Shown one piece after another: positions 2,486-63,380 of a stretch of 64,000 nt of DNA. This DNA is from Octopus sinensis (lineage: Eukaryota). The position numbers were made by a program, and so were the translations under genes. The DNA is taken from positions 8,990,001 through 9,054,000 of the forward strand of contig NC_043007.1 of NCBI RefSeq assembly GCF_006345805.1, in the 5' to 3' direction. The notes beneath the pieces are model-generated. The model worked only from the letters and a program-made list of their open reading frames with translations, searched no databases and was not told where the DNA came from. How positions within the stretch are numbered: position 1 is the first letter of the stretch; each line of letters opens with the position of its first letter.

Positions 2486-2522
<37 letters not shown>

Positions 2523-2524
<2 letters not shown>

Positions 2525-2933: not shown

Positions 2934-3059
2934 ATGCATGTGCATGGAATGATCAGACGTCAGCACAAATTAAAATAGATTACATTTTCAAAGTTAAATA
3001 GAAAGTCCAGATAAAATTTCTTTTTTGAAACACCTGTTTCCAAATAAATCATTGTTCTC

Positions 3060-8567: not shown

Positions 8568-9050
8568 ATGGAAGTATAAGGCACATAATTCTTTATGAGT
8601 ACCAAAAAAGGAAACTCTGCAGCCGAAGCGACTCGAAACATACACTCAGTTTATGGGAAAGAATGCTTGAATGAAAGAATTTGCAGAAGATTGTTTGCAA
8701 AATTTAGAAGTGAAATTTCAGCCCTGAAGATGAAGATCAAACAGGACGCCCAGTTGAGCTTGATGATAAGCTCTTTAAGTCATTACTTGAAGAAAATCCT
8801 GCATTATCCGTTGAAGAATTGGCATTAAAGCGTAGTTCAAACCATACAACGGTTCGTCGTCATTTTCAATAACTTGGAATGGTTCCTAAACTTGGAAAAT
8901 GAGTGCCTCATGAATTGCCCGAAACTCATTTCACTCTTTTTGGATAGACTTGTGACTGGTAACGAAAAATGAATCTTCTATTGAAATATTAAACGTCGTA
9001 AATAGTGACTTGGTAAAAGGGGAAAAAGCTCAACCACAACCAAGAAGGGA
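8568..9050 (+). pseudogene. Mariner transposase N-terminal half (second family), truncated
   Basis: Translates to YEYQKGNSAAEATRNIHSVYG...RRLFAKFRS (HTH), LGK*VPHEL (WVPHEL motif) and DRLVTGNEK (first catalytic D region); stops and frameshifts present. Confidence 0.85.
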
Positions 9051-9061
9051 CATGGCATTGC

Positions 9062-9610
9062 AATTTGGTTGTTGGATTTTTATAATCAAAATGTCCAAAA
9101 ATGGGAGCTGTTCCTTGCTAAATTCCACTGTAAATTGAATGCTGGAGTTTATATTTTTCAATGTAGATTTGAAATCCAGAAGTTTATTATAGGTTTCATA
9201 ACAGATGATAAAACAATCGTCTAGGTACCTTTTCCAGTTTCCTCTTATATACTGGTGGAATGGGGGTGCAAACTTTTGGGGCAAAAGTTCACATAGGGTA
9301 GATTCAAAGAAACCCATTATCACGTTCGCAAGGACAGACGCTGCATTCGTTCCCATCTCAATACGGCATCATTGGTGATAGTATGTTTCATAGAATAGGA
9401 AGTAATTTTGAAGGATGAACTTCAGAGATTCAATGACAAAAGTCATGTTTATGCGGTCCGGGAGAACTTCGGGGCATATTATAACCAGAATTTTATTGCC
9501 TCTATTGTGTAGCCATATGGAATGTTGGTGTAGAGGTTGATGACATCGAAGGAGACAAATAGTGCTTCTTCGTTGGTGGTTTTTGGTAGATGCTCGAGCA
9601 TATTCAGACC
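9062..9610 (-). mobile_element. Penelope-like element (PLE) reverse transcriptase fragment
   Basis: Minus strand gives [28 protein letters not shown] and IQFTVEFSKEQLPFLDILI, all PLE RT motifs. It interrupts the mariner copy. Confidence 0.85.
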
Positions 9611-9930
9611 GTCTCTACATACATACATACATACATACATACATACATACATACATACATACACACATACATACATACATACATACATACATACATACAT
9701 ACATACATACATGTATATAGATATATATATATATATATAAATATATATATATATAGTATATATATATATATGTATACGTATATATATATATATATATACA
9801 TATATATATACATATATATACATATATATATATATATACATAATATATATATAAATAATATCACACACATATTTATACACTCACACAGATAGTCACAGAC
9901 ACACACATATATAATATTTATGTCAATATG

Positions 9931-15775: not shown

Positions 15776-15822
15776 CGGATATTTACATTTGACAGTTATT
15801 TGTCCTCATTTTGTTTGTTATT

Positions 15823-15868
15823 AATACATCGTTTCGGCTGATAAACTCTCCAGCCTTCATCAGGTGTC
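15823..15868 (-). ncRNA. Minimal type I hammerhead ribozyme motif (PLE-associated), probably inactive copy
   Basis: GACAC-CUGAUGA-A-GGCUG(GAGAGUUUAU)CAGCC-GAAA-CG-AU-GUAUU. Core and 5-bp stem II are perfect; U16.1 reads A and stem I has one mismatch. Confidence 0.7.
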
Positions 15869-15884
15869 TAACGGTACTTGGATG

Positions 15885-26078: not shown

Positions 26079-26477
26079 GTGGAGGCGCAATGGCCTAGTG
26101 GTTAGGGCAGCGGACTCGCGGTCATAGGATCGCGATTACGATTCCCAGATCAGGCGTTGTGAGTGTTTGTTGAGCGAAAACATCTAAAGGTCCGGGAGGC
26201 TCCAGCAAGGGGTGGTGGTGAACTCTGCTGTATTCTTTTACCACAAATTTCTTATACTCTTTCTTCCTGTTTCTGCCGTACCTGTATTTCAAAGGGCTAG
26301 TCTTGTAACACTCTGTGTCTCGTTGAATCTCCCAGAGAACTACGTTAAGGGTACATGTGTCTGTGAAGTGCTCAGCCACTTGATCGTTAATTACACGAGC
26401 AGCACGAGCAGGCTGTTCCCTTGATCGGATCAACTGAAACCCTCGTCGTCGTTATCGACGGAGTGCCACAGGTATAG
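26079..26477 (+). mobile_element. tRNA-derived SINE, family B2, full length with 9-bp TSD
   Basis: Head gtggaggcgcaatggcctagtggttagggcagcggactcgcggtc; TSD tgacggagt at 26070-26078 and 26478-26486; second copy at 57768-58113. Confidence 0.88.
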
Positions 26478-29680: not shown

Positions 29681-29928
29681 TTATCGAGCGATTACTGTTT
29701 CAATCTCATTCTGAGATTTAGTTATGATAGTGTATTGCCATTATGCTGTTCACTATGCAGTGAGATTCAATGTGAGTTTGTTTGTCGCTGTCGCCAATGT
29801 TGTTGCTTTTATCAAAATAGTAAGGAAACCCTGAATGGACAGACATATGACCAACAGCTCTCCCCTCATATCAATAACATTTCGTATTTTCATACATAGG
29901 GTATCCAGGCCCATATTTTCCAATGTAT

Positions 29929-30150
29929 ACTCTCTTTTACTCTTTTACTTGTTTCAGTCATTTGACTGGGGCCATGCTGGAGCACCGCCTTTAATCGAGA
30001 AAATCGACCCCGGCACTTATTCTTTTGTAAGCCCAGTACTTATTCTATCGGTCTCTTTTGCCGAACCGCTAAGTGACGGGGACATAAACTCACCAGCATC
30101 GGTTGTCAAGCAATGCTTGGGGGACAAACACAGACACACAAACACACACA

Positions 30151-30195
<45 letters not shown>

Positions 30196-30366
30196 CATAT
30201 ATACGACGGGCTTCTTTTCAGTTTCCGTCTACCAAATCCACTCACAAGGCTTTGGTCGGCCCGAGGCTATAGTAGAAGACACTTGCCCAAGGTGCAGCGC
30301 AGTGGAACTGAACCCGGAACCATGTGGTTGGTAAACAAGCTACTTACCACACAGCCACTCCTGCGC
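29929..30366 (-). mobile_element. SINE family A, full length
   Basis: Collinear with 2523-2933 and 61433-61842. Confidence 0.9.
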
Positions 30367-30491
30367 CTCACTTTTATTTTAAATAATAATTTCTAATGCG
30401 TTCTAATGTGAATCCAGTGGGGTTTAGCTGCTATTTCTACAGCATAAATTGCGACATCGTGTACACGTTACTAATATTATTTAGTAGAGTA

Positions 30492-35638: not shown

Positions 35639-36700
35639 CGAGGGACAGTACAAAATTATACGCACTCTTGTTTTTCCAATGTATTTACTGAAAAACAAGG
35701 GTTAAACAGGTACCTTATTTTTCAGGTATTGTCTGCTTCCTTTTCAATTCACTTGGTCCAGTGCTCCACAAACTTGCTTATTCCCTCCAAGACGAAGGAA
35801 TTTAGTTGGTCGTGCAACCGTTCATGCACGGCTTCTTTCACATCATCAACTGTAGGAAATCGACAACTTCGTAAACCATCTTTGTGTGATCCAAGGATAT
35901 GACAGTGCGAAGGAGCGAGAGATGGGTGTAGGCTGGGCGTTCTAGCAGCTCAAAACCCAATTGGCTAATGATTTCAACTGTCTGGGTTGTCGTGTGTGGG
36001 TTTGCATTGTCATGCAACATCAAATTTTTCTTCGACAATAGGCCTCGGGTTTTGGTGCGAATTGCTGGCTTCACATTGTTGGCCAGCAAAGCATTGTATC
36101 TTGCACTATTGAACGTACACCTTTTCTCCATGTAGTCTTCCAGTATATGCTCCTTTGATACCCCAAATAGGGTTAGCATCACCTTTATAGCGGAAGACTG
36201 AGTCTTGAATTTCTTCATCACCACGATGTTTCCAATTTATACTCTATCTTTTGGATTCTGCCTCTTAATGATGGATCCACGTTTCATCTCCTCTGATTAC
36301 TCTGGTCAAAAATTGCTCGCCCTCGTTGATGTAGCGGTCGATTAAACGTTGGCAGACCTCAAGACATTTGCGCTTGTGCTCTGTAGTAAGTTCTCTTCGC
36401 TCTCATCTTGCACTGACTTTATGGAAGCCGAGCTCATCCTGGATGATTTCATAGGCAGAACCATGACTAATCTGCAGAGAAGGAACTACCTCAACAATGA
36501 TAACACACCTGTTTACCATTACAATCTCTCGAGCATGCTGAATCTTCTCGCCGGTGGAGACCCTTGACAGGTGTTCCACTATTGTGCTACAAACCTCCGA
36601 AGAATTTCAGCACCTGGCAAACCTTCCGACTACAGATATCGGATCGCTGCTCTTTGATCGTGATTGGCGCACATTGTTAGTGAAGTGGCCAAACTTATAC
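35639..36700 (-). mobile_element. Mariner element (third family), decayed transposase
   Basis: TIR ta|cgagggacagtacaaaattatacgcac. Minus strand gives GDETWIHH, KVMLTLFG, KPAIRTKTRGLLSKKNLMLHDNANPHT and LGFELLERPAY. Confidence 0.88.
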
Positions 36701-41389: not shown

Positions 41390-43951
41390 CTGTGTGGCCA
41401 TCTCCTCCCTGGAATGACATCACTTGAACAGAGACAGACAGAGTCCTTGTTGGCTCTCACACGCAAGTTTTTCATGGAACAAGCAGTGCTTCGGCCAACA
41501 AGAGGTGAGAATGTCTTGGACCTCTGTTTCACAAGCAACCCGATGCTCATCCACAACTTAATGGTAACACCAACAATTCTGTCAGATCACAACTTAGTAG
41601 AGGTAATGATATATGGTATGAGAGAGTTAGTTGAGACGCAGCCATTAGAAAATACCACAGGCCTATCCAGTCTAAACTTCCATAAGGCAAACTGGAAGAA
41701 GATCAACGAAGAGATCCGAAAACATGACTGGAGTGACTTCATCACCACACAAGACGCCAACACACATTTCCAACATTTCATGACAACAATACAGAACATA
41801 TGCCATAAGTTTGTCCCGGAGAAAAAAGCCAGCGGGCATAGGAACGTTATTCCCAGAGACAGGAAAATACTTATGAGGCGAAGAGCTAAGCTCTCGAAGC
41901 AACTGAATGCACGGCAGAGAAACAATGAGGGACTCCACCTGAAACTTTTTGAAACGGAAACTGCACTCAAACTTTCCTATGAGAAGGAGAGGGCAGAGAG
42001 AGAAGCCAGGGCCATAGAGAGTATTAAAACAAACCCTAAAGCTTTCTTTAAATTTGCGAAAGAAACCACCTCGGTACACTGCAAGATTGGCCCACTCTTT
42101 GATAAAAAGGGCTCTCTAACTGAGGACCCCCAAGGGATAAGTGAAATACTAAAGGAACAGTATAAAAGTGTGTTCACATCCCCTCTGGGGCACATGCAAA
42201 TCACAAACCCAGAGGTTTCTTTGATGCCACAACACTCCAAAACCAAAAACAAACAATCGACCACATAGACATAACAGAGAGGGATGTAATATCTGCCATA
42301 GAAGAAATGAGATAAACTCAGCTGCTGGACCAGATGGATTCCCAGCAGTCCTCCTAAAAACATGCAGGCATGCCCTAGCGGGACCACTGAAGAGCTCTTC
42401 AGTGGTTCCTTGGCTAACGTTAAAACTGCCCAGGGCGCTAAAAGAAGGCACCATATGCCCTATCCACAAAGGAGGGAGTAGAGCAGAGGCCAAAAACTAC
42501 AGGCCAGTCTCCCTGACGTCACACATAAGTAAGGTCATGGAACGAATCATCAGAAAAAAACTGATCACGTTCCTCGAAGAAACTAACCGTCTCACTGACA
42601 CACAGCATGGCTTTCGCCCAGGAAAAACTGCCTTACGCAGCTGTTACAACACTACGACTGGGTACTGAAACAACTACTGGATCGCTCACAGGTGGATGTG
42701 GTATATCTCGACTTTGCGAAGGCTTTGACAAAGTCGACACGGAGTGATATGTCACAAATTACTCAGACTTGGCATAACAGGAAAAGTAGGTGAGTGGATA
42801 CATGACTTCCTTGAAGGACAGAAGCCAGATGGTTGCAGCCAAGGAGCCTCTCGGGAAAGACACCAATAGCAAGCGGGGTGCCACAGGGCACAGTCTTGGG
42901 ACCCTTGCTGTTTTTGGTGGCGCTCTCTGACATGCCCTTGGTAGCACAAACAACATCCCTCACTAGCTATACTGATGACACAAAGGTAGCACAGGCAATC
43001 AAAAACCCAGCTGATGCTGACCTTTTACAACAAGATCTGGATGCCATATACAAATGGGCTGAAGACAACAAAATGCAATTTAATGCTGGTAAATTTCAAG
43101 CCTTACAATATCAGCTGTAAACACATATACATTACAACAGAACTATACTGGTCAGGAGGGATCGAAATCCCAGTATCGAAATCAATACGGGACCTGGGGA
43201 TAGACATGAGTGACGATGCATCTTTTCTTCACACATCGCGAAGTGGCGACAATGTGCAGACGACTCACTGGCTGGATCCTGAGGACATTCCGGACAAGAG
43301 ACTGCGAGACCATGTTGACACTATGGAGGACATTTGTCCTAAGCCGCCTGGACTACTGCTCCCAACTGTGGGTCACCGCATAGTGTCAAACTAACCACAG
43401 AGCTTGAGACAATCCAAAGACATTTCACCAAGAGGATTTCCACCATGAAAGAAAAGAACTATTGGGAGAGGCTTAGGGAACTCAATTTGTACTCCTTGGA
43501 ACGAAGACGAGAGAGATATGCAGTGATATACATATGGAAAATCCTGGAGGGACTAGCACCAAATTTTGGAATTGAGAGCTGTTCCAATCCCCGTACAGGA
43601 CGTCACTGTGTGGTGCCAAAGGTCCCGTCTTCCACATCCAGGGTAAGGAGCAGATACTGTAATAGCCTGGGGTTCAGGGGCCCTCAGCTGTTCAAACAAA
43701 CTGCCAAGAAAACTAAGAGATCTACATGATGCGGATGTGGACGTTTTCAAAAACATCTAGACAAGCTGCTTTCCGGGATCCCAGATGAACCCACTGCAAG
43801 GTACGAAGGTAACCTAAGGGCAGTAGCTACAAACTCTCTCTTAGATCAGTGGCCAGCCACGGCAAACTGGACTTAGAGAGGGTAGCAACAAGGGCGGTGG
43901 CACCAGCATGGCCTCAGCCGGATGGCTGAAACAAGTAAAAGGGTAAAAGGG
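41390..43951 (+). mobile_element. CR1/L2-group LINE, 5'-truncated ORF2 (APE end plus RT) with intact 3' tail
   Basis: RGENVLDL...LSDHNLV (APE), PIHKGGSRAEAKNYRPVSLTSHISKVMERII, QHGFRPG, YLDFAK, SGVPQGTVLGPLLF, YTDDTKV, ERLRELNLYSLERRRERY; tail (GTAAAAGG)2. Several frameshifts. Confidence 0.95.
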
Positions 43952-50581: not shown

Positions 50582-50644
<63 letters not shown>

Positions 50645-50763
50645 GGTGTGTGTGTATTGTGTGTGGGGTGTATATATATATAATATATATATATATATTT
50701 ATCTATATATACGTATGTGGGTATATATATATATACATACATCAACATATATTACATATCGTA

Positions 50764-50796
<33 letters not shown>

Positions 50797-50827
50797 CATA
50801 CATAAACATATATATACAATACATATT

Positions 50828-50863
<36 letters not shown>

Positions 50864-51087
50864 TATATATATATACCATAACATATACATGCATATATAT
50901 ATATATATATATATATATAAACAAATCAAATTGCGATAAAATAAAAAAAATTATAATCGCTGGTATTACTAACACAAGCCATATATTTTTCATATATCAG
51001 TACATTAAGGCGAAATATGTGCTAGGAATACAGAAGCTTGATAAATTAAGTGAAATGAAGATAAAAACATTTACTAAACCGGAAAAT

Positions 51088-51164
51088 TCTCAGACTGCAG
51101 TTTCTTTCTATTTAGCAAACAAGATAATTTATTTGCCCAGGGAGAATTCATCAGTGAGACCCTG
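51088..51164 (-). ncRNA. Type I hammerhead ribozyme, first of 16 copies
   Basis: CAGGG-UCUCA-CUGAUGA-[stem II]-GAAA-C-UGCA-GUC^UGAGA; all invariant core nucleotides are present. Confidence 0.85.
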
Positions 51165-53860
51165 TTTCTCTGGGATCCTAACTCACTAGAAGCATGTGCG
51201 TCTAATGAGTTACTCTTCCTAACTAATCATATCCGCGCAGACTCCGAACGTCCCGACAACACTAGGGATTCTGGTATATCGCCTGGCGCTCATAATTTAT
51301 CGAGAATATGTAAACAAATCAAATTGCGATAAATAAAAAAATAATTATAATCGCTGGTATTACTAACACAAGCCATATATTTTTCATATATCAGTACATT
51401 AAGGCGAAATATGTGCTAGGAATACAGAAGCTTGATAAATTAAGTGAAATGAAGATAAAAACATTTACTAAACAAACCGAAAATTCTCAGACTGCAGTTT
51501 CTTTCTATTTAGCAAACAAGATAATTTATTTGCCCAGGGAGAATTCATCAGTGAGACCCTGTTTCTCTGGGATCCTAACTCACTAGAAGCATGTTGTCTA
51601 ATGAGTTACTCTTCCTAACTAATCATATCACTGCGCAGACTCCGAACGTCCCGACAACACTAGGGAATTCTGGTATATCGCCTGGCTCATAATTTATCGA
51701 GAATATGTAAACAAATCAAATTGCGATAAAATAAAAAAATAATTATAATCGCTGGTATTACTAACACAAGCCATATATTTTTCATATATCAGTACATTAA
51801 GGCGAAATATGTGCTAGGAATACAGAAGCTTGATAAATTAAGTGAAATGAAGATAAAAACATTTACTAACTAAACCGAAAATTCTCAGACTGCAGTTTCT
51901 TTCTATTTAGCAAACAAGATAATTTTTTTGCCCAGGGAGAATTCATCAGTGAGACCCTGTTTCTCTGGGATCCTAACTCACTAGAAGCATGTGCGTCTAA
52001 TGAGTTACTCTTCCTAACTAATCATATCACTGCGCAGACTCCGAACGTCCCGACAACACTAGGGAATTCTGGTATATCGCCTGGCGCTCATAATTTATCG
52101 AGAATATGTAAACAAATCAAATTGCGATAAAATAAAAAAATAATTATAATCGCTGGTATTACTAACACAGCCATATATTTTTCATATATCAGTACATTAA
52201 GGCGAAATATGTGCTAGGAATACAGAAGCTTGATAATTAAGTGAAATGAAGATAAAAACATTTACTAAACCGGAAAATTCTCAGACTGCAGTTTCTTTCT
52301 ATTTAGCAAACAAGATAATTTATTTGCCCAGGGAGAATTCATCAGTGAGACCCTTTTCTCTGGGATCCTAACTCACTAGAAGCATGTGCGTCTAATGAGT
52401 TACTCTTCCTAACTAATCATATCACTGCGCAGACTCCGAACGTCCCGACAACACTAGGGAATTCTGGTATATCGCCTGGCGCTCATAATTTATCGAGAAA
52501 TATGTAAACAAATCAAATTGCGATAAAATAAAAAATAATTATAATCGCTGGTATTACTAACACAAGCCATATATTTTTCATATATCAGTACATTAAGCGA
52601 AATATGTGCTAGGAATACAGAAGCTTGATAAATTAAGTGAAATGAAGATAAAAACATTTACTAAACCGGAAATTCTCAGACTGCAGTTTCTTTCTATTTA
52701 GCAAACAAGATAATTTATTTGCCCAGGAGAATTCATCAGTGAGACCCTGTTTCTCTGGATCCTAACTCACTAGAAGCATGTGCGTCTAATGAGTTACTCT
52801 TCCTAACTAATCATATCACTGCGCAGACTCCGAACGTCCCGACAACACTAGGGAATTCTGGTATATCGCCTGGCGCTCATAATTTATCGAGAAATATGTA
52901 AACAAATCAAATTGCGATAAAATAAAAAAATAATTATAATCGCTGGTATTACTAACACAAGCCATATATTTTTCATATATCAGTACATTAAGGCGAAATA
53001 TGTGCTAGGAATACAGAAGCTTGATAAATTAAGTGAAATGAAGATAAAAACATTTACTAAACCGGAAAATTCTCAGACTGCAGTTCTTTTCTATTTAGCA
53101 AACAAGATAATTATTTGCCCAGGGAGAATTCATCAGTGAGACCCTGTTTTCTGGGATCCTAACTCACTAGAAGCATGTGCGTCTAATGAGTTACTCTTCC
53201 TAACTAATCATATCACTGCGCAGACTCCGAACGTCCCGACAACACTAGGGAATTCTGGTATCGCCTGGCGCTCATAATTTATCGAGAAATATGTAAACAA
53301 ATCAAATTGCGATAAAATAAAAAAAATATTATAATCGCTGGTATTACTAACACAAGCCATATATTTTTCATATATCAGTACATTAAGGCGAAATATGTGC
53401 TAGGAATACAGAAGCTTGATAAATAAGTGAAATGAAGATAAAAACATTTACTAACCGGAAAATTCTCAGACTGCAGTTTCTTTCTATTTAGCAAACAAGA
53501 TAATTTATTTGCCCAGGGAGAATTCATCAGTGAGACCCTGTTTCTCTGGGATCCTAACTCACTAGAAGCATGTGCGTCTAATGAGTTACTCTTCTAACTA
53601 ATCATATCACTGCGCAGACTCCGAACGTCCCGACAACACTAGGGAATTCTGGTATATCGCCTGGCGCTCATAATTTATCGAGAAATATGTAAACAAATCA
53701 AATTGCGATAAAATAAAAAATAATTATAATCGCTGGTATTACTAACACAAGCCATATATTTTTCATATATCAGTACATTAAGGCGAAATATGTGCTAGGA
53801 ATACAGAAGCTTGATAAATTAAGTGAAATGAAGATAAAAACATTTACTAAACCGGAAAAT

Positions 53861-53937
53861 TCTCAGACTGCAGTTTCTTTCTATTTAGCAAACAAGATAA
53901 TTTATTTGCCCAGGGAGAATTCATCAGTGAGACCCTG
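53861..53937 (-). ncRNA. Type I hammerhead ribozyme, consensus copy (cleavage predicted between 53866 and 53865)
   Basis: 5'-CAGGG UCUCA CUGAUGA AUUCU CCCUG GGCAAAUAA AUUAUC UUGUUUGCU AAAU AGAAA GAAA C UGCA GUC UGAGA-3'. Confidence 0.87.
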
Positions 53938-56900
53938 TTTCTCTGGGATCCTAACTCACTAGAAGCATGTGCGTCTAATGAGTTACTCTTCCTAACTAAT
54001 CATATCACTGCGCAGACTCCGAACGTCCCGACAACACTAGGGAATTCTGGTATATCGCCTGGCGCTCATAATTTATCGAGATATGTAAACAAATCAAATT
54101 GCGATAAAATAAAAAAATAATTATAATCGCTGGTATTACTAACACAAGCCATATATTTTTCATATATCAGTACATTAAGGCGAAATATGTGCTAGGAATA
54201 CAGAAGCTTGATAAATTAAGTGAAATGAAGATAAAAACATTTACTAAACCGGAAAATTCTCAGACTGCAGTTTCTTTCTATTTAGCAAACAAGATAATTT
54301 ATTTGCCCAGGGAGAATTCATCAGTGAGACCCTGTTTCTCTGGGATCCTAACTCACTAGAAGCATGTGCGTCTAATGAGTTACTCTTCCTAACTAATCAT
54401 ATCACTGCGCAGACTCCGAACGTCCCGACAACACTAGGGAATTCTGGTATATCGCCTGGCGCTCATAATTTATCGAGAAATATGTAAACAAATCAAATTG
54501 CGATAAAATAAAAAATAATTATAATCGCTGGTATTACTAACACAAGCCATATATTTTTCATATATCAGTACATTAAGGCGAAATATGTGCTAGGAATACA
54601 GAAGCTTGATAAATTAAGTGAAATGAAGATAAAAACATTTACTAAACCGGAAAATTCTCAGACTGCAGTTTCTTTCTATTTAGCAAACAAGATAATTTAT
54701 TTGCCCAGGGAGAATTCATCAGTGAGACCCTGTTTTCTCTGGGATCCTAACTCACTAGAAGCATGTGCGTCTAATGAGTTACTCTTCCTAACTAATCATA
54801 TCACTGCGCAGACTCCGAACGTCCCGACAACACTAGGGAATTCTGGTATATCGCCTGGCGCTCATAATTTATCGAGAAATATGTAAACAAATCAAATTGC
54901 GATAAAATAAAAAAATAATTATAATCGCTGGTATTACTAACACAAGCCATATATTTTTCATATATCAGTACATTAAGGCGAAATATGTGCTAGGAATACA
55001 GAAGCTTGATAAATTAAGTGAAATGAAGATAAAAACATTTACTAAACCGGAAAATTCTCAGACTGCAGTTTCTTTCTATTTAGCAAACAAGATAATTATT
55101 TGCCCAGGGAGAATTCATCAGTGAGACCCTGTTTCTCTGGGATCCTAACTCACTAGAAGCATGTGCGTCTAATGAGTTACTCTTCCTAACTAATCATATC
55201 ACTGCGCAGACTCCGAACGTCCCGACAACACTAGGGAATTCTGGTATATCGCCTGGCGCTCATAATTTATCGAGAAATATGTAAACAAATCAAATTGCGA
55301 TAAAATAAAAAAATAATTATAATCGCTGGTATTACTAACACAAGCCATATATTTTTCATATATCAGTACATTAAGGCGAAATATGTGCTAGGAATACAGA
55401 AGCTTGATAAATTAAGTGAAATGAAGATAAAAACATTTACTAAACCGGAAAATTCTCAGACTGCAGTTTCTTTCTATTTAGCAAACAAGATAATTTATTT
55501 GCCCAGGGAGAATTCATCAGTGAGACCCTGTTTCTCTGGGATCCTAACTCACTAGAAGCATGTGCGTCTAATGAGTTACTCTTCCTAACTAATCATATCA
55601 CTGCGCAGACTCCGAACGTCCCGACAACACTAGGGAATTCTGGTATATCGCCTGGCGCTCATAATTTATCGAGAAATATGTAAACAAATCAAATTGCGAT
55701 AAAATAAAAAATAATTATAATCGCTGGTATTACTAACACAAGCCATATATTTTTCATATATCAGTACATTAAGGCGAAATATGTGCTAGGAATACAGAAG
55801 CTTGATAAATTAAGTGAAATGAAGATAAAAACATTTACTAAACCGGAAATTCTCAGACTGCAGTTTCTTTCTATTTAGCAAACAAGATAATTTATTTGCC
55901 CAGGGAGAATTCATCAGTGAGACCCTGTTTTCTCTGGGATCCTAACTCACTAGAAGCATGTGCGTCTAATGAGTTACTCTTCCTAACTAATCATATCACT
56001 GCGCAGACTCCGAACGTCCCGACAACACTAGGGAATTCTGGTATATCGCCTGGCGCTCATAATTTATCGAGAAATATGTAAACAAATCAAATTGCGATAA
56101 AATAAAAAATAATTATAATCGCTGGTATTACTAACACAAGCCATATATTTTTCATATATCAGTACATTAAGGCGAAATATGTGCTAGGAATACAGAAGCT
56201 TGATAAATTAAGTGAAATGAAGATAAAAACATTTACTAACCGGAAATTCTCAGACTGCAGTTTCTTTCTATTTAGCAAACAAGATAATTTATTTGCCCAG
56301 GGAGAATTCATCAGTGAGACCCTGTTTCTCTGGGATCCTAACTCACTAGAAGCATGTGCGTCTAATGAGTTACTCTTCCTAACTAATCATATCACTGCGC
56401 AGACTCCGAACGTCCCGACAACACTAGGAATTCTGGTATATCGCCTGGCGCTCATAATTTATCGAGAAATATGTAAACAAATCAAATTGCGATAAAAAAA
56501 AAATAATTATAATCGCTGGTATTACTAACACAAGCCATATATTTTTCATATATCAGTACATTAAGGCGAAATATGTGCTAGGAATACAGAAGCTTGATAA
56601 ATTAAGTGAAATGAAGATAAAAACATTTACTAAACCGGAAAATTCTCAGACTGCAGTTTCTTTCTATTAGCAAACAAGATAATTTATTTGCCCAGGGAGA
56701 ATTCATCAGTGAGACCCTGTTTCTTCTGGGATCCTAACTCACTAGAAGCATGTGCGTCTAATGAGTTACTCTTCCTAACTAATCATATCACTGCGCAGAC
56801 TCCGAACGTCCCGACAACACTAGGGAATTCTGGTATATCGCCTGGCGCTCATAATTTATCGAGAAATATGTAAACAAATCAAATTGCGATAAAATAAAAA

Positions 56901-57042
56901 AATAATTATAATCGCTGGTATTACTAACACAAGCCATATATTTTTCATATATCAGTACATTAAGGCGAAATATGTGCTAGGAATACAGAAGCTTGATAAA
57001 TTAAGTGAAATGAAGATAAAAACATTTACTAAACCGGAAAAT

Positions 57043-57119
57043 TCTCAGACTGCAGTTTCTTTCTATTTAGCAAACAAGATAATTTATTTGCCCAGGGAGA
57101 ATTCATCAGTGAGACCCTG
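57043..57119 (-). ncRNA. Type I hammerhead ribozyme, last complete copy
   Basis: Identical to the consensus motif. Confidence 0.85.
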
Positions 57120-57767
57120 TTTCTCTGGGATCCTAACTCACTAGAAGCATGTGCGTCTAATGAGTTACTCTTCCTAACTAATCATATCACTGCGCAGACT
57201 CCGAACGTCCCGACAACACTAGGGAATTCTGGTATATCGCCTGGCGCTCATAATTTATCGAGAAATATGTAAACAAATCAAATTGCGATAAAATAAAAAA
57301 ATAATTATAATCGCTGGTATTACTAACACAAGCCATATATTTTTCATATATCAGTACATTAAGGCGAAATATGTGCTAGGAATACAGAAGCTTGATAAAT
57401 TAAGTGAAATGAAGATAAAAACATTTACTAAACCGGAAAATTCTCAGATAAATTCATATATATATATATATACACATATCTGTTAATATATTTTTACAGT
57501 AGGTTATATTCCATAGCATCTGCTAGACGCCCGTCCTCTAGAAAGGGCTGTGTACTTTACAAAGTATACATTTTGAATACACAAATGACTGAAACCAGGG
57601 TCCAAAATGAAAGTTCCATAAAAATGCAAATGCAACGCAACAACACATATGCACACCACAAAACCCACTCACGTGAGCACCCATTCCTACGCACACAAAG
57701 ACACACAGATACACACACACATACACACAAGTATAGGTGCATATATACACACTTGCATATGTATGTA

Positions 57768-58113
57768 CAGCGGACTCGCGGTCATAGGATCGCGGTTTCG
57801 ATTCCCAGACCGGGCGTTGTGAGTGTTTATTGAGCGAAAACACCTAAAAGCTCCACGAGTCTCCGGCAGGGGATGGTGGTGATCCCTGCTGTACTCTTTC
57901 ACCACAACTTTCTCTTACTTCCTGTTTCTGTTGTACCTGTACTTCAAAGGGCCGGCCTTGTCACTCTCTGTGTCACGCTGAATATCCCCGAGAACTACGT
58001 TAAGGGTACACGTGTCTGTGGAGTGCTCAGCCACTTACACGTTAATTTCATGAGCAGGCTGTTCCGTTGATTCGGATCAACCGGAACCCTCATCGTCGTA
58101 ACCGACGGAGTGC
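57768..58113 (+). mobile_element. SINE family B2, 5'-truncated
   Basis: Collinear with 26079-26477. Confidence 0.85.
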
Positions 58114-59100
58114 TTCCATCATGTATGTACATATAAAAAACCTAGTAAACGCAACTTTGGAAAAAAAAAATCTAAGCGAGGCTTTAATGAGTATTATTCT
58201 ATATCTTATACTTGGAAGATAAGAATGAGCCTACAGAAAAATCCCATCACTTGAAGCAGTTTATTTCATGCATCGCCTACAGATAAAGATAGAGAAACGT
58301 TTTGGGCGATTTTGCTGTGTCCTATTTTCAGTTACATGCTTAGTATCATCATTCGCCAAGGTTATTTCATATTTAATGTAGACTGCGATAGTAAGAGAGT
58401 CTAGCAAAATGGTGTTTGATGCTTATTTACATGCAGCTTATTGTGTGAGTTACCCGTGTTTCACGGCTCAACTTTTTAACTGAAATATTTATGAGGGAAG
58501 ACCGGGACAGCTGTGCAAGCTCTTAGCGAACTTTACGGTCATGATTTGTTAAAGAAGATTCTATTACGTAGGAGGATGGCACGAAATTATACTGAAATTT
58601 GATAGTTGGTCTGATACATGCAACAGGGTGAACACTGCTAAAGTTGATAAAGGTATCCAAGCGCGCTGCTGATGGTGTTAAACGGTTCGATAGTTTACAT
58701 ATGCCATCTAAGTTGGTCATAGTACAAGGCATCTAAATTGAGTTCTTAGTCTCGCAAATACACCATATGGTAATGGTACGTTAATTATATGTTACAAAGG
58801 ATGAAAGAGAAAGACGACCACGGCAAAATTTGAGCTCAAAGCGCTAATAGTCGGAACAAATATCGTAAGGTGTAGTTTTTCCGTCTTTTTCTTATTTGCA
58901 ATCCATATCCTTGGATTGATACTATTCTTATTTTGGAAGGATGCAAAGCTGAGTAGACATAGAATATTTTATATCTAAAATATCTATATCAACTACATAT
59001 GTTGCGTTAACTATATAGCATTATTCTCTATTTCAAAACAATAAAGTTTCCAATAGGTTTTGTGAAAAGATGGATTAATTTCCTCTTCTGTAGTAATATT

Positions 59101-60261: not shown

Positions 60262-60385
60262 TTGCTTAGTGGTTTGAGCGTTGGGCTCACAACTCTCAGT
60301 TAGTGTGTTCGATTCCCAGACCGGGCTGTGTGTTGTGTTCTTGAGCAAACACTTTTTGCATAGTTGTAGAAATTAGGTGCGACGT
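60262..60385 (+). mobile_element. SINE head fragment
   Basis: gcttagtggtttgagcg...gttcgattcccagaccggg...cttgagcaa (A/B boxes plus core). Confidence 0.55.
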
Positions 60386-60387
60386 AA

Positions 60388-60778
60388 TCTTTATATATAA
60401 AAGTGAGGTTGTGTGCTGTCTGTCTCCTACGATTTAGATTCCTAACTACTCCCACATTTTGCGGTGCAGTTTAACCAAAACCGGGTATCTTATAGTCGTG
60501 ATTCATATCGAGCCCTTCTGGGTATTAGCGCGCGTCTATGATGAGTCTACGATTTAAAAAAAAATTACCATCAATTTTTCCCATTTTTAATGCATTTTTG
60601 GCATATATAAGGGAACATTATAAAATTACATTAAATCTCAGAACGTAAAAAGCCACAGTAACACCTCCCTCCCTTTGTGGTTAGCCATATTGAGATGGCT
60701 ATTATACTTTACATCTCTAAAAATGCTTATATAGTTATTTCCCTTACAAACCCAAGCAACGCTGGGCGATACTGCTAG
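60388..60778 (+). mobile_element. Complete non-autonomous Helitron (391 bp)
   Basis: A|TC 5' end (tctttatatataaaag), subterminal hairpin cccaagc-aac-gctggg, CTAG|T 3' end; no TSD. Confidence 0.85.
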
Positions 60779-61432
60779 TAATTTCTAAGAAATAAAGCAA
60801 AACTCATGTAGAACAGGCAGCATTTCACCGTTTGATGACCATGCAAATACTTCATGTTGACTCCAATACTTATCATTTTGTACTGTCTTGTCAACGGAAT
60901 ACGGCTTCGTTGCGCTCAAGTACATTTTACCCGAAATATTTTTGTCTACTTTTCTCAAACGTATTGTACCTAAGACATTTATATAATATTTACTTTCTTC
61001 AGTAACACTGTACGCTTTGATTTAAATGATGCAAATATTGGTACGCTTTTACTCTTTTACTCTTTTACTCGTTTCAGTCATTTGACTGTGGCCATGCTGT
61101 AGCACCGCCTTTAATGCTCACTACAAATTTTTAACCATATGAACCATTTTTCATTTATCACTGTTTCATTTAACACGGTACGCATTCTGGAACCAAACAC
61201 CCATGATAAACGCGGTTACATATTCTTTTATTCACATTTCTTTTAGATATTTCCTGTCACTTAAGGTGTAAATTTCTTGCATTATTGTATGGCTCCTACA
61301 GCCTTGCTGGCCCTAAACGAAGCTCTTTTAAAAGCGACCTTTGAATATTGTTCATACATACATACATACATACACACATACATACATACATACATACATA
61401 CACATATATATATATATATATATATGCACATC

Positions 61433-61842
61433 TACTCTTTTACACTTTACTCTTTTACTTGTTTCAGTCATTTGACAGCGGCCATGCTGGAGCACCGCCT
61501 TTAGTCGAGCGAATAGACTCCAGAACTAATTCTTTGTAAGCCCAATACTTATTCTATCGGTCTCTTTTGCCGAACCGCTACGTGACGGCGACGTAAACAC
61601 ACCAGCATCGGTTGTCAAGCAATGCTAGAGGGACACAGACACACAAACATGCACACACACATATATATATGCATATATACGACGGGCTTCTTTCGGTTTC
61701 CGTCTACCAAATCCACTCACAAGGCTTTAGTCGGCCCGAGACTATAGTAGAAGACACTTACCCAAGATACCACGCAGTGGTACTGAACCCGGAACCATGT
61801 GGTTGGTAAGCAAGCTACTTACCACACAGCCACTCCTGCGCC
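61433..61842 (-). mobile_element. SINE family A, full length (an extra tail-only copy lies at about 61045-61112)
   Basis: Collinear with 2523-2933. Confidence 0.9.
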
Positions 61843-61845
61843 TAT

Positions 61846-61883
61846 ATAGATACTTGCATATATATATATATGCAAGTATCTAT
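61846..61883. repeat. Perfect 38-bp palindrome
   Basis: atagatacttgc-(at)7-gcaagtatctat. Confidence 0.9.
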
Positions 61884-63380
61884 GTATATAGCACAATGCG
61901 ACTACTAAACATTTAGACAACTAAAGGAAGGATGTTCAAATTTTAGCCAACGATTTATCCCCCAACATTTTAACCTGAAACTCATAGACGTGTTCTCTCT
62001 TCCAGTCGCTTCTTCCATCACTAGCACTATATTTGAAATAAGCCTGATCGAGATATCTTAAAAGGCACACTCATTCCTAGAAAAACTCTTGTATCCCATA
62101 TTGGGCCTCCCTTGCAAGATATTAGATTAAGCTATCCTTTTCCCCACATCTCTCATGTGTTATTTTTCACTGCACTGTTTTCCAGAAGTCATACATTAAT
62201 TTTTGAAATTAGTCATGTTCTAGAACATAGATTAATAACCCTGGTTGCAGACACTGTTTTTTGTTTTATTTAAAAAGAAAAAAAAAACAGACATTAATAG
62301 AACCACACAGGCAACTGCTGCCTCAAAAAATTCAGATGGCGTGTTTACAAATCCTAAACCCTAAATATCACGAACACACATACGCATACACAGGCGTATA
62401 CAGACGCGCAAAGACGCGAATCTATATACACATACATACACATATACTCCGGAGCTTTAGCTGAATAAAAAAAACTTGCCTAAGGTTTACCACAGAGGAA
62501 CTAAACCCAAAACCACAGGATTGAAAAGTGAGCATTTTCAACAGGCGTCAATATCTGAATCTATATAAGCGCGCGCGTGTGTGTTTGTGTGTATGTGTGT
62601 GTGTGTGTGTCTGATAATGCAAACAAACGTGTATTTGTATATATGTATATAAACACACGCACACACATATATATATATATAGATATATATATATATGTAT
62701 ATATACACATATATATACGCACATATACGTACATATATAGAGATGTATATATATATATACATATGTGTGTGTATATATATATATATTTATGTATGGGTAT
62801 GTATACACGTGTATGTATAAGTAATTGCGTATATTGCGTGTGAGTACGTGTGTCTGTAAGTATTTTTCAGTGTACTTATAAGTGCAACAATGAATGTATT
62901 TTCGGACGAAATATTTATATTGAAATTTCAGAACGCTGTTCTTTTAAGTTAAGAACAAATTATATTCTATTACAGAATAGGAACACTTAACAACGTCGCA
63001 TTTATTCTACCGTTTCGCCTGAGGGTATCAGTAGGTCATGAGTAAACGTCAACAATTGGATTACAAACCTAATTCAGACTCATCCATTATTGGTCTTGTT
63101 TCTCTTGACGCTCTTCTCGGTATTTTCCTCTCCTCTAGATAAAACCTGATTTCACGGGCTTGCGATAATACTGTACTTTAGCCATAAGACTCATGCATAC
63201 AAAGATACATACATACATGCATACAAAGATACAAAGATACATACATATATATATATGCATAACATATTTATAAACATACATATATGTAAATATACATATA
63301 TACAGACATGTGTATATATGCATATATAAGCTTATCTTCTTTCATCTATCTATCTAAATCTCTTGCTCTCTATCAATCTC

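What the first reader, a model, noticed from the sequence alone, without database searches (positions are those of the whole stretch)
50919..57448. A 6.5-kb 'satellite' is a tandem array of hammerhead ribozymes (candidate cephalopod retrozyme / circRNA system)
Seen: each ~398-bp unit reads on the minus strand UCUCA-CUGAUGA-[structured stem II]-GAAAC-UGCA-GUC-UGAGA. This supplies every invariant hammerhead core base, a 5-bp stem I and a GUC cleavage triplet in type I order, 16 times over. Established: tandem type I hammerhead repeats with monomers of a few hundred nt are known (newt satellite 2, Schistosoma Sm-alpha, Dolichopoda pDo500, metazoan non-LTR retrozymes); their transcripts self-cleave to monomers that can circularise. 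Inference: minus-strand transcription would release ~398-nt monomers or circRNAs. I cannot tell whether this family has already been described.
Basis: partly seen in the sequence, partly recalled or inferred. Interest (0 to 1): 0.95.

Follow-up and report, generated by a model that had tools for sequence, protein, structure and literature searches.

The report
Octopus hammerhead-ribozyme tandem repeat (retrozyme)
A 6.5-kb block of 399-bp repeats in an octopus-like genome carries a self-cleaving hammerhead ribozyme motif in each repeat, which makes it a good but untested new example of the already known animal "retrozyme" elements that produce small circular RNAs.

Summary
Window 50913-57448 is a tandem array of a 399-bp unit, with 16 full units plus about 0.45 of a unit at 98% identity. 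Read on the minus strand, every unit contains a type I hammerhead motif. Fifteen of the 16 motifs have an intact catalytic core.

The motif is unlikely to be chance. A strict descriptor hit 4 of 200,000 shuffles of the unit and nothing else in the window. Rfam Hammerhead_1 aligns end to end at 24.3 bits, which is below its gathering score of 34.

Several features fit the non-LTR retrozymes described in 2020:
- The unit is AT-rich and non-coding.
- (TA)n tracts flank both ends of the array.
- The array's 5' edge lies within 2 nt of the predicted cleavage site.
- A Penelope-like RT relic lies in the same window.
- A second hammerhead with the same palindromic helix III occurs in Octopus sinensis.

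Helix III has only 2 bp, and folding predicts cleavage as a double hammerhead in multimeric transcripts.

Self-cleavage, transcription and circles remain untested, and no second copy of this unit could be fetched.

The parts
50913..57448 (-). Tandem array of a 399-bp unit. It holds 16 complete units (57446 down to 51093) plus a 3'-truncated 17th unit (51092 down to about 50913-50920) that lacks the ribozyme.
   Evidence: TRF; unit extraction and consensus; no copy elsewhere in the window.
53860..53933 (-). Representative type I hammerhead motif (74 nt). It has stem I UCUCA/UGAGA, core CUGAUGA...GAAA, helix II of 43 nt and helix III AC-UGCA-GU. Cleavage is predicted after C17, between 53866 and 53865.
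   Evidence: Rfam Hammerhead_1 at 24.3 bits, model positions 1-45; descriptor; folding.
57042..57115 (-). Hammerhead motif, identical to the consensus.
56643..56715 (-). Hammerhead motif with a 1-nt deletion in the 3' part of helix II. The core is intact.
56247..56320 (-). Hammerhead motif, identical to the consensus.
55850..55923 (-). Hammerhead motif, identical to the consensus.
55453..55526 (-). Hammerhead motif, identical to the consensus.
55055..55127 (-). Hammerhead motif with a 1-nt deletion in the distal helix II hairpin. The core is intact.
54655..54728 (-). Hammerhead motif, identical to the consensus.
54257..54330 (-). Hammerhead motif, identical to the consensus.
53463..53536 (-). 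Hammerhead motif, identical to the consensus.
53070..53142 (-). Hammerhead motif with a broken core (GAAAGAAAC changed to GAAAAGAAC, which hits G12/A13) and a 1-nt deletion in helix II. It is predicted to be inactive if the bases are real rather than assembly error.
52673..52745 (-). Hammerhead motif with a 1-nt deletion (CCC to CC) in the helix II internal loop. The core is intact.
52278..52351 (-). Hammerhead motif, identical to the consensus.
51882..51955 (-). Hammerhead motif with one substitution (U to A) in the distal helix II hairpin. The core is intact.
51484..51557 (-). Hammerhead motif, identical to the consensus.
51087..51160 (-). Hammerhead motif, identical to the consensus. It is the last one on the minus strand.
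57446..57448 (-). 5' edge of the array on the minus strand. Homology to the unit begins at 57448 (TC) or 57446 (U1.1), which is 0-2 nt from the predicted cleavage site (57447|57446).
   Evidence: Read directly from the sequence. A random edge would fall within +/-2 nt of the site with probability of about 5/399.
57447..57455 (-). Junction filler GAATTTATC between the upstream (TA)n and the first unit. Its last 8 nt (AATTTATC) also occur once in the unit, at positions 46-53.
57456..57472 (.). Short (TA)n tract immediately upstream of the array, in the minus-strand sense.
50586..50919 (.). Long (TA)n microsatellite into which the truncated last unit runs (...UUUGUUUA|UAUAUA). It is the candidate target sequence.
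   Evidence: TRF; sequence

Best explanation
The array is a non-LTR retrozyme: a non-coding, non-autonomous retroelement made of head-to-tail 399-bp units, each encoding a type I hammerhead ribozyme on the minus strand.

Proposed mechanism, with the status of each step:
1. Read-through or local transcription of the minus strand gives multimeric RNA. This is inferred.
2. Single hammerheads are poorly stable because helix III has only 2 bp and helix II opens with an A.A mismatch. The helix III segment ACUGCAGU is a perfect palindrome. Two ribozymes, from neighbouring units or from two transcripts, can therefore pair into an 8-bp helix III and form a double hammerhead. The palindrome is shown by the sequence. 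The double hammerhead is predicted by folding, and its activity is inferred.
3. [quoted passage not shown] A host RtcB-type tRNA ligase circularises them. This step is by analogy with PMC7229834.
4. In the monomer or circle, the segment GAGAAUUU just downstream of the cleavage site re-pairs with GAAUUCUC (A9 plus the 5' strand of helix II). This sequesters the core and protects the circle. It is a folding prediction.
5. New genomic copies are made by a Penelope-like element reverse transcriptase priming at (TA)n targets. This locus has (TA)n on both sides, and its 5' edge lies at the ribozyme cleavage site. That is what is expected if the cDNA ran off an RNA whose 5' end had been made by self-cleavage. 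This step is inferred from a single locus.

The near identity of the units points to recent amplification or homogenisation.
For: - Array and unit.
- Complete type I hammerhead in 15 of 16 units, none elsewhere in the window, and 4 of 200,000 shuffles.
- Full-length alignment to Rfam Hammerhead_1, with every core position matched.
- No other ribozyme family on either strand of the unit at E<=10.
- No coding capacity. The longest stop-free stretch is 83 codons, and the stop-free stretches have no relative among 5.8 billion proteins. No tRNA-like part.
- G+C is 35%.
- Dimer prediction. The 74-nt motif alone prefers a non-hammerhead fold (-18.1 against -10.6 kcal/mol when the hammerhead is enforced). 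Two motifs cofold into the complete double hammerhead (-40.3). A 526-nt transcript holding two ribozymes forms the 8-bp helix III in its minimum-energy fold, and forcing one of the two helix III segments to stay unpaired costs 6.3 kcal/mol.
- Circle. The sense-strand MFE is -90.3, z=-1.98, with 63% of bases paired and the core sequestered. Enforcing the hammerhead costs 8.9 kcal/mol.
- Edges. The 5' edge is 0-2 nt from the cleavage site, and (TA)n lies on both sides.
- (TA)n is a documented preferred target of several Penelope-like clades: PMC8557442.
- An RT relic with Penelope-type motifs lies at window 9033-9620(-). Its relatives are in O. sinensis, Argonauta and Mytilus.
- Independent octopus locus. 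O. sinensis L013 10702-10763 has CUACG-CUGAUGA-AGCUA[21 nt]UAGCU-GAAAC-UGCA-GUA|CGUAG. It shares the helix III palindrome, also has an extended helix II, and sits in a roughly 415-bp segment between two (TA)n tracts, 3.8 kb downstream of a Penelope-like RT ORF. About 0.004 strict hits were expected in the 76 kb of O. sinensis DNA searched when it was found, or about 0.01 over all 209 kb.
- Literature. Metazoan type I hammerheads typically have a 1-2 bp helix III with a palindromic loop and act as dimers in tandem repeats (PMC4209133). Axolotl HHR_Amex2 has a 2-bp helix III plus tetraloop and a mismatch at the base of helix II, and it cleaves well only as a dimer. Mussel retrozymes are 350-390 bp (PMC7229834).
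Against: - The Rfam score of 24.3 bits is below the gathering score of 34. Rescaled to the whole window and all families, that E-value would be only about 0.2.
- A10.1.A11.1 replaces the usual G-C pair next to the core. Helix II is unusually long (43 nt) and interrupted. Either feature could lower or abolish activity.
- In the 526-nt dimer fold, stems I and II are outcompeted by the alternative pairing.
- The units are almost identical, and most differences look like 1-nt assembly errors. The array therefore carries no covariation signal.
- No second copy of this unit was found in 209 kb of cephalopod DNA, in metagenomes or in viral contigs.
- The O. sinensis hammerhead was found with a descriptor that demands pairing, so its compensatory stems are not independent evidence. 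Its flanks and its helix II insert are not significantly similar to this unit. Rfam does not report it even at E<=10.
- The 5'-edge argument rests on one locus, and the O. sinensis element does not start at its cleavage site.
- The circle's structure z-score is modest.
- There are no RNA data of any kind.
Confidence: 0.75

Rival explanations
1. The array is a relic. The hammerhead is genuine by descent, but this family no longer self-cleaves or moves through RNA. The array grew by unequal crossing-over as ordinary satellite DNA, and the motif survives only because the array is young.
For: - There is an A.A mismatch at the base of helix II, and helix II is long and interrupted.
- The single-motif hammerhead fold is 7.5 kcal/mol above the minimum-energy fold.
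- In a long dimeric transcript, stems I and II lose to an alternative pairing.
- The units are near identical, which fits DNA-level amplification.
- No other copies were found.
Against: - The array's 5' edge sits at the cleavage site. DNA-level amplification does not predict this, but it does not exclude it for the founding insertion either.
- The two-motif complex folds into a complete double hammerhead.
- Comparable imperfect motifs, such as axolotl HHR_Amex2 with a U.U mismatch, are active as dimers (PMC7229834).
Confidence: 0.17
2. The array is ordinary satellite DNA in which a hammerhead-like string arose by chance.
For: - The Rfam score is below the gathering threshold.
- A 24-bit hit is expected roughly once per few gigabases for this single model. 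This extrapolates the E-value.
Against: - The strict descriptor hits 4 of 200,000 shuffles of the unit.
- The coincidence with a roughly 400-bp AT-rich tandem unit, a palindromic helix III, an array edge at the cleavage site and (TA)n flanks is jointly very improbable.
- The same helix III palindrome occurs in an independent O. sinensis hammerhead.
Confidence: 0.03
3. The repeats are the pseudo-LTR or tandem part of an autonomous Penelope-like element, not a separate non-autonomous element.
For: - Penelope-like elements carry type I hammerheads in tandem pseudo-LTRs and prefer (TA)n targets.
- An RT relic lies in the window.
Against: - There is no RT or endonuclease ORF within or next to the array. 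The RT relic is 41 kb away.
- Sixteen uniform 399-bp units are not a pseudo-LTR layout.
- Penelope hammerheads are minimal forms without a helix III. That type is present separately in this genome, as a decayed copy at 15780-15869 with an intact copy in O. sinensis L014.
Confidence: 0.04

Closest known systems
Non-LTR retrozymes of the mussel Mytilus galloprovincialis (Cervera & de la Pena 2020, PMC7229834)
   Same: - Both are mollusc elements.
- Both are tandem units of similar size (350-390 bp in the mussel, 399 bp here).
- Both are AT-rich and non-coding, with one type I hammerhead per unit.
- Both hammerheads lack the archetypal loop 1/loop 2 contacts.
- Both genomes also contain Penelope-like elements.
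   Different: - The mussel hammerhead cleaves as a single motif (about 0.1 per min), and its circles are shown by northern blot.
- Here helix III has only 2 bp with a palindromic loop, and helix II is 43 nt with an A.A mismatch at its base. Dimer dependence is therefore predicted.
- Nothing has been shown experimentally for this element.
- Sequence relatedness to the mussel units was not tested, because no mussel sequence was at hand.
Newt satellite 2 and axolotl retrozymes (HHR_Amex1 and HHR_Amex2, Rtz_331 and Rtz_353)
   Same: - They are tandem units of 330-350 bp.
- Helix III is weak, with 1-2 bp and a palindromic tetraloop.
- HHR_Amex2 also has a mismatch at the base of helix II.
- Cleavage is efficient only as a double hammerhead.
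- Monomers, multimers and circles are found in vivo.
   Different: - They are vertebrate elements.
- They have a short canonical helix II with conserved loop contacts (Amex1).
- They reach up to about 120,000 copies. The copy number here is unknown.
Minimal hammerheads of Penelope-like elements (PMC4209133; Lunse et al. 2017)
   Same: - They are type I and act as dimers.
- They have an unpaired base at the 5' end of a longer-than-usual helix II.
- Stem I is short (4-5 bp).
- They are linked to (TA)n-targeting retroelements.
   Different: - They have no helix III.
- They lie in the pseudo-LTRs of RT-encoding elements rather than in uniform non-coding arrays.
- This type exists separately in octopus (L014; a decayed copy at window 15780-15869).
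Hammerhead in Octopus sinensis contig VCDQ01011892.1 (L013 10702-10763), found here
   Same: - The core CUGAUGA...GAAAC is the same, and the helix III palindrome ACUGCAGU is identical.
- Stem I has 5 bp.
- Helix II is extended by a distal hairpin.
- (TA)n lies on both sides.
- Two motifs cofold into a double hammerhead.
   Different: - It is a single segment of about 415 bp, not an array.
- H17 is A, and 10.1-11.1 is a proper A-U pair.
- Stems I and II have different sequences.
- The flanks and the helix II insert are not significantly similar.
- The element does not begin at its cleavage site.
Schistosoma Sm-alpha and Dolichopoda pDo500 hammerhead repeats (Rfam RF00163 seed type)
   Same: - They share type I topology.
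- They share the core and the AAAUAG 3' half of loop 2, which aligns to the Rfam consensus.
- They have a repeat context.
   Different: - They have a canonical 4-bp helix II with a 6-nt loop.
- Here a 29-nt insertion sits in that loop, which is why the Rfam score falls below threshold.

Membership tests
Type I hammerhead ribozyme (structural definition) | Conserved core: C3 U4 G5 A6 N7 G8 A9, G12 A13 A14, the A15.1-U16.1 pair, and H17 (not G). | tested here: met
   CUGAUGA...GAAA, A15.1/U16.1 and C17 are present in 15 of 16 units. One unit has G12/A13 altered.
Type I hammerhead ribozyme (structural definition) | Three helices around the core, with helix I open (the 5' and 3' ends lie in helix I). 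| tested here: met
   - Stem I is UCUCA/UGAGA (5 bp).
- Helix II is UUCU/AGAA, then an internal loop, then a 9-bp hairpin.
- Helix III is AC/GU with a UGCA loop.
- Caveat: there is an A.A mismatch at 10.1/11.1.
Type I hammerhead ribozyme (structural definition) | Site-specific self-cleavage 3' of H17. | not testable with these tools
   This needs in vitro transcription of monomer and dimer constructs.
Type I hammerhead ribozyme (structural definition) | Conservation and covariation of the stems among homologues. | tested here: inconclusive
   - The units in the array are near identical.
- The only other octopus hammerhead keeps all stems with different bases, but it was found with a pairing descriptor and is not demonstrably homologous outside the core and helix III.
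Rfam RF00163 Hammerhead_1 (operational threshold) | Bit score at or above the curated gathering score (34). | tested here: not met
   The score is 24.3 bits over the full model. It is lowered by a 29-nt insertion in loop 2 and two non-canonical pairs.
Metazoan non-LTR retrozyme (Cervera & de la Pena 2020) | Head-to-tail repeats of about 150-450 bp, each with one type I hammerhead. | tested here: met
   399 bp x 16.45 copies.
Metazoan non-LTR retrozyme (Cervera & de la Pena 2020) | No LTRs, PBS/PPT or coding capacity, and G+C below 50%. | tested here: met
   - The unit is uniform and has no ORF. The longest stop-free stretch is 83 codons, with no protein relatives.
- G+C is 35%.
- PBS and PPT motifs were not searched for explicitly.
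Metazoan non-LTR retrozyme (Cervera & de la Pena 2020) | Target-site duplications flank the insertion when they are recognisable. | tested here: inconclusive
   Both flanks are (TA)n, so any duplication is hidden. The same difficulty is reported for (TA)n-targeting Penelope-like elements.
Metazoan non-LTR retrozyme (Cervera & de la Pena 2020) | Expressed as unit-length linear and circular RNAs. | not testable with these tools
   No transcriptome data were reachable. The protein-index route to assemblies found nothing.
Metazoan non-LTR retrozyme (Cervera & de la Pena 2020) | The circular RNA is predicted to be stable and highly self-paired. | tested here: inconclusive
   The circular MFE is -90.3 kcal/mol with 63% of bases paired and z=-1.98 against dinucleotide shuffles (5 of 100 shuffles reach it). 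The antisense strand gives z=-1.43.
Metazoan non-LTR retrozyme (Cervera & de la Pena 2020) | Coexists with Penelope-like elements in the same genome. | tested here: met
   - An RT relic at 9033-9620(-) has relatives in O. sinensis, Argonauta and Mytilus.
- A Penelope-type minimal hammerhead family is present.
- Assigning the RT to Penelope-like elements rests on motif recall (FDVxxLYTNIP, RYLDD, LPFLD) and on the HTH_animal and RVT_1 labels of its relatives. It was not tested by phylogeny.
- Cephalopod Penelope-like elements are documented.
Metazoan non-LTR retrozyme (Cervera & de la Pena 2020) | Dispersed in multiple genomic copies (monomers, dimers and multimers). | not testable with these tools
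   The source genome is not searchable here. There are no copies in 209 kb of O. sinensis, O. bimaculoides and Argonauta loci.

The most novel reading that the evidence does not exclude
Octopus genomes may hold a lineage-specific clade of dimer-dependent type I hammerheads. Its marks are the palindromic helix III ACUGCAGU and a helix II extended by a distal hairpin. Standard Rfam annotation would miss the clade.

This locus may also preserve a direct genomic footprint of how such elements are copied. Three features would point to target-primed reverse transcription by a Penelope-like RT at (TA)n, using ribozyme-processed RNA with template jumping or rolling-circle copying:
- the 5' edge lies at the in vivo self-cleavage site;
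- the 3' end lies about 160-180 nt downstream of that site, as in the O. sinensis element;
- (TA)n lies on both sides.
Probability: 0.3. Interest if true: 0.45.

Novelty: new member of a known kind. Interest (0 to 1): 0.3.

Why it matters
If the RNA is made and processed, octopus tissues would contain an abundant 399-nt circular RNA produced by a ribozyme rather than by back-splicing. That would extend experimentally tractable retrozymes to cephalopods.

The motif also shows that hammerheads with large helix II insertions fall below the Rfam gathering score. Genome papers that count Hammerhead_1 hits, such as the 235 reported for the giant squid (PMC6962438), would not count motifs of this type.

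The array edge at the cleavage site and the (TA)n flanks give a cheap, genome-wide testable prediction about which retrotransposon machinery copies retrozymes. The current proposal is Penelope-like elements (bioRxiv 10.64898/2026.07.22.740005).

None of this would change how the field thinks. It would add a mollusc class and some mechanistic detail.

Tried and rejected
1. An Rfam scan of the whole window at gathering thresholds found nothing. The evalue-mode scan of 1-50900 returned only microsatellite noise resembling miRNA families.
2. Exact-pattern scans of metagenome and viral contigs for the ribozyme found nothing. A looser pattern gave 11 hits, about the number expected by chance, and none had a stem I.
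3. To reach eukaryotic assemblies through the protein index, I searched the unit's four longest stop-free translations as a chimeric query. There were no hits.
4. An exact-protein look-up of a window ORF found no record.
5. I tested whether the O. sinensis element (L013) is a homologue of this unit outside the ribozyme. Local alignment scores of the flanks were reached by 98 and 406 of 500 shuffles. The score for the helix II insert was reached by 1811 of 5000 shuffles. Homology is therefore not shown.
6. A SINE-like or tRNA-derived origin is not supported. ARAGORN finds nothing.
7. I considered a second ribozyme on the plus strand. No family reaches E<=10 there.
8. The second CTGATGA...GAAAC match, at 15831-15863(-), is not part of this element. 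It belongs to a different family, the Penelope-type minimal hammerhead. Here it is decayed, with U16.1 changed to A and one stem I mismatch.
9. I checked for a Penelope-like ORF next to the array. No credible ORF lies within 6.5 kb on the high-coordinate side. On the low-coordinate side the only ORFs of 110 aa or more are low-complexity microsatellite translations.
10. Literature searches for octopus or cephalopod retrozymes or hammerhead satellites found no description.


Full report
**1. What is in the sequence**

Tandem Repeats Finder reports one long-period array in the window: 50913-57448, period 398, 16.5 copies, 98% matches. I cut the minus strand at every GCAGUC. This gives 16 complete units of 393-400 nt, running from 57446 down to 51093, plus a 3'-truncated 17th unit (51092 down to about 50913-50920) that lacks the ribozyme.

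The consensus unit is 399 nt with 35% G+C. Of the differences between units, 51 are single-base indels, mostly in homopolymers. About 20 are substitutions, and several of these are alignment artefacts of small insertions. This pattern looks like long-read consensus error, so the true units may be even closer to identical. No other copy of the unit lies in the window.

**2. The hammerhead motif**

On the minus strand each unit reads GUCUCA-CUGAUGA-AUUCU...[insert]...AGAAA-GAAAC-UGCA-GUC|UGAGAA. This is type I order:
- 5' strand of stem I, then C3-A9, helix II and G12-A14;
- a helix III hairpin (A15.1 C15.2 / G16.2 U16.1 with loop UGCA);
- C17, then the 3' strand of stem I.

Eleven of the 16 motifs are identical and four carry one change in helix II. 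One (53070-53142) has GAAAGAAAC changed to GAAAAGAAC, which removes G12/A13. The stated cleavage position, 53866|53865, is right.

**3. Is it more than chance?**

- Rfam at gathering thresholds reports nothing.
- With E-value thresholds on 901 nt, RF00163 Hammerhead_1 aligns over its whole model (positions 1-45) at 24.3 bits, E=0.0026. The gathering score is 34. The score is lowered by a 29-nt insertion in loop 2 and by two non-canonical pairs: A.A at 10.1/11.1 and the outermost stem I pair.
- That E-value is for all 4227 families over 901 nt. Rescaled to the whole window it would be about 0.2. For the one family named in advance it stays very small.
- I wrote a strict type I descriptor (core, stem I of at least 5 bp, helix II of at least 4 bp with one mismatch allowed at its base, helix III of at least 2 bp, loop of 3-8 nt, H17). 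It hits 15 units and nothing else in the window on either strand, even when relaxed. It hits 4 of 200,000 composition-matched shuffles of the unit, scanned on both strands.
- No other ribozyme family appears on either strand of the unit.

**4. Predicted folding and likely mode of action**

Helix II folds as 4 bp (UUCU/AGAA), an internal loop and a 9-bp hairpin. The 3' half of the internal loop, AAAUAG, is the part that aligns to the loop 2 consensus of the Rfam model.

The 74-nt motif alone prefers a non-hammerhead fold: -18.1 kcal/mol against -10.6 with the hammerhead enforced. The helix III segment ACUGCAGU (the PstI site) is a perfect palindrome. Two motifs cofold, as the minimum-energy structure, into a complete double hammerhead with an 8-bp helix III (-40.3 against 2 x -18.1).

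In a 526-nt transcript that spans two neighbouring ribozymes, the 8-bp helix III is part of the minimum-energy fold. Forcing one of the two helix III segments to stay unpaired costs 6.3 kcal/mol. In that fold, however, stems I and II lose to an alternative pairing.

The same alternative dominates the circular monomer. GAGAAUUU (positions 2-9, just after the cleavage site) pairs with GAAUUCUC (A9 plus the 5' strand of helix II), and CGGU pairs with ACUG of the core. Enforcing the hammerhead in the circle costs 8.9 kcal/mol. The circular sense RNA is modestly more stable than shuffles (z=-1.98, 63% paired; antisense z=-1.43).

This is the behaviour the literature describes for metazoan type I hammerheads. 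A 1-2 bp helix III with a palindromic loop gives poor cleavage as a monomer and good cleavage as a dimer in tandem transcripts, and it protects the circle (PMC4209133; PMC7229834). The closest described ribozyme is axolotl HHR_Amex2. It has a 2-bp helix III plus tetraloop and a U.U mismatch at the base of helix II. It shows 22% cleavage in 1 h as a monomer and efficient cleavage as a dimer.

**5. Edges and surroundings**

On the minus strand the array begins ...(TA)n-GAAUUUAUC|UGAGAAUUUUCC. Homology to the unit starts at U1.1 (57446), or two bases earlier (the UC at 57448-57447). The 5' edge therefore lies 0-2 nt from the predicted cleavage site. A random edge would do this with probability of about 5/399.

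The 3' edge is in mid-unit (...UUUGUUUA), 173-180 nt after a cleavage site. It runs straight into a 330-bp (TA)n microsatellite. Both flanks are thus (TA)n, and any target-site duplication is hidden. (TA)n is a reported preferred target of several Penelope-like element clades (PMC8557442).

A 5' end at the self-cleavage site is what a cDNA copied to the end of a ribozyme-processed RNA would leave. It is the only hint in the DNA that cleavage happens in vivo, and it rests on one locus.

There is no ORF within the array. On its high-coordinate side no credible ORF lies within 6.5 kb, and on its low-coordinate side the only long ORFs are microsatellite translations. ARAGORN finds no tRNA-like part.

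**6. Organism and partners**

- A LINE-type ORF in the window (41414-42268) has its best relatives in Octopus sinensis and O. bimaculoides, at 51-53% identity.
- Dispersed repeats in the window are 93-95% identical to copies in O. sinensis loci. They are at most 90% identical to O. bimaculoides copies, and no hit of 200 bp or more was found in the Argonauta loci. The source is an Octopus or a close relative.
- At 9033-9620(-) lies a reverse-transcriptase relic with a frameshift and an in-frame stop. Its motifs ([23 protein letters not shown]) are ones I recognise as Penelope-like. Its relatives are RT fragments of O. sinensis, Argonauta hians and Mytilus coruscus. Pfam gives only weak RVT_1.

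**7. A second octopus hammerhead**

I fetched 209 kb of cephalopod DNA around relatives of the window's transposon proteins. The descriptor found one further hammerhead, in O. sinensis VCDQ01011892.1 (L013 10702-10763): CUACG-CUGAUGA-AGCUA[21 nt]UAGCU-GAAAC-UGCA-GUA|CGUAG.

Its features:
- It has the same ACUGCAGU helix III.
- Its helix II is also extended by a distal hairpin.
- Stem I has 5 bp, and 10.1-11.1 is a proper A-U pair.
- It lies in a roughly 415-bp segment between two (TA)n tracts, 3.8 kb downstream and on the same strand as a Penelope-like RT ORF.
- Two copies of it again cofold into a double hammerhead.

From the shuffle rate, about 0.004 strict hits would be expected by chance in the 76 kb searched when it was found, or about 0.01 over the full 209 kb.

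Caveats:
- The descriptor demands pairing, so the "compensatory" stems are not independent evidence.
- The flanks and the helix II insert are not significantly similar to this unit.
- Rfam does not report it even at E<=10.
- The element does not start at its cleavage site.

It shows that hammerheads of this build exist in Octopus. It does not show that they belong to the same family as this unit.

**8. What led nowhere**

Pattern scans of metagenome and viral contigs found nothing beyond chance hits. A protein-index search with the unit's stop-free translations and an exact-protein look-up also found nothing. I could not reach the source genome or any RNA data.

**9. Comparison with what is known**

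[quoted passage not shown] In 2020 they were defined as non-LTR retrozymes, expressed as 170-400-nt linear and circular RNAs in a coral, a mussel and the axolotl, with circularisation by an RtcB-type ligase (PMC7229834).

A 2026 preprint argues that they are non-autonomous derivatives of Penelope-like elements. The giant squid genome paper lists 235 Rfam Hammerhead_1 hits without further study. I found no paper describing retrozymes or hammerhead repeats in octopus.

This locus meets every sequence-level criterion of a non-LTR retrozyme that I could test. It fails only the Rfam operational threshold. Its expression, cleavage, circularity and genomic copy number are untested.

**10. Verdict**

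It is a new member of a known kind. Its local peculiarities are a long interrupted helix II, an A.A mismatch at the base of that helix, an obligate-dimer design, and an array edge at the cleavage site within (TA)n.

- Retrozyme explanation: 0.75.
- Inactive relic: about 0.17.
- Chance motif: about 0.03.
- Part of an autonomous element: about 0.04.

Interest: 0.3.

Noticed in passing
window 15780-15869 (-), core at 15831-15863: A second hammerhead-like string: GACAC-CUGAUGA-A-GGCUG...CAGCC-GAAACGAUGUAUU. It is a decayed copy of a Penelope-type minimal hammerhead, with U16.1 changed to A and one stem I mismatch. It is 91% identical over 90 bp to O. sinensis L014 7389-7478. There the motif is intact (GACAC/GUGUU stem I, palindromic ACGU in place of helix III), and a second, inverted copy lies about 350 bp away. 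A 30-bp match also occurs in O. bimaculoides L015.
   Followed up: partly
window 9033-9620 (-): A reverse-transcriptase relic with Penelope-like motifs ([26 protein letters not shown]). It is broken by a frameshift near 9479 and an in-frame stop at 9369-9371. Its relatives are in O. sinensis, Argonauta hians and Mytilus coruscus. No endonuclease part was seen.
   Followed up: partly
window 8589-8869 (+) and 35838-36224 (-): Mariner/Mos1-type transposase fragments. The first matches HTH_48 at E=1e-11 and the second weakly matches Transposase_1. The first lies directly next to the RT relic and may have truncated it.
   Followed up: no
window 41414-42268 (+) and 43014-43394 (+): A LINE-type fragment holding the end of an Exo_endo_phos_2 endonuclease domain and a possible RT tail. 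It is 51-53% identical to O. sinensis and O. bimaculoides proteins.
   Followed up: partly
window 2501-2946, 29926-30368, 60379-60802, 61359-61890: A dispersed repeat of about 420-450 bp, possibly SINE-like, present at four or more sites in the window. It is 80-93% identical to many copies in the O. sinensis loci L012-L014.
   Followed up: no
window 57768-58120 and 26079-26468: Another dispersed repeat, starting about 320 bp from the high-coordinate edge of the array. It is 95% identical to O. sinensis L012 50128-50483 and 90% identical to O. bimaculoides L015 50665-51012.
   Followed up: no
window 57447-57455 (-): The 9-nt filler GAAUUUAUC lies between the upstream (TA)n and the first unit. 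It ends in AAUUUAUC, which occurs once in the unit (positions 46-53). It may be a trace of template switching, or it may be chance in AT-rich sequence.
   Followed up: no
window 50913-57448: Fifty-one of about 71 differences between units are single-base indels, mostly in homopolymers. This is the signature of uncorrected long-read assembly error. Copy number and the one broken core should be checked against reads.
   Followed up: partly
window 7547-7839: A 19-bp minisatellite (GTCCATATGGCCCCTGAGA, 15.4 copies, 87% matches) lies inside a 245-codon ORF that is probably spurious.
   Followed up: no
L013 10333-10500 (O. sinensis): A nearly perfect 168-bp palindrome, resembling a MITE hairpin, is inserted between a (TA)n tract and the hammerhead-bearing segment. 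It scores as several plant and animal miRNA families in Rfam well below their thresholds.
   Followed up: no
whole window: The window is extremely rich in microsatellites ((TA)n, (CA)n, (TATC)n, (ATT)n and others; 124 TRF rows), with 34.8% G+C. These tracts produce hundreds of sub-threshold Rfam miRNA hits (mir-297, mir-3149, mir-466) that are noise.
   Followed up: no
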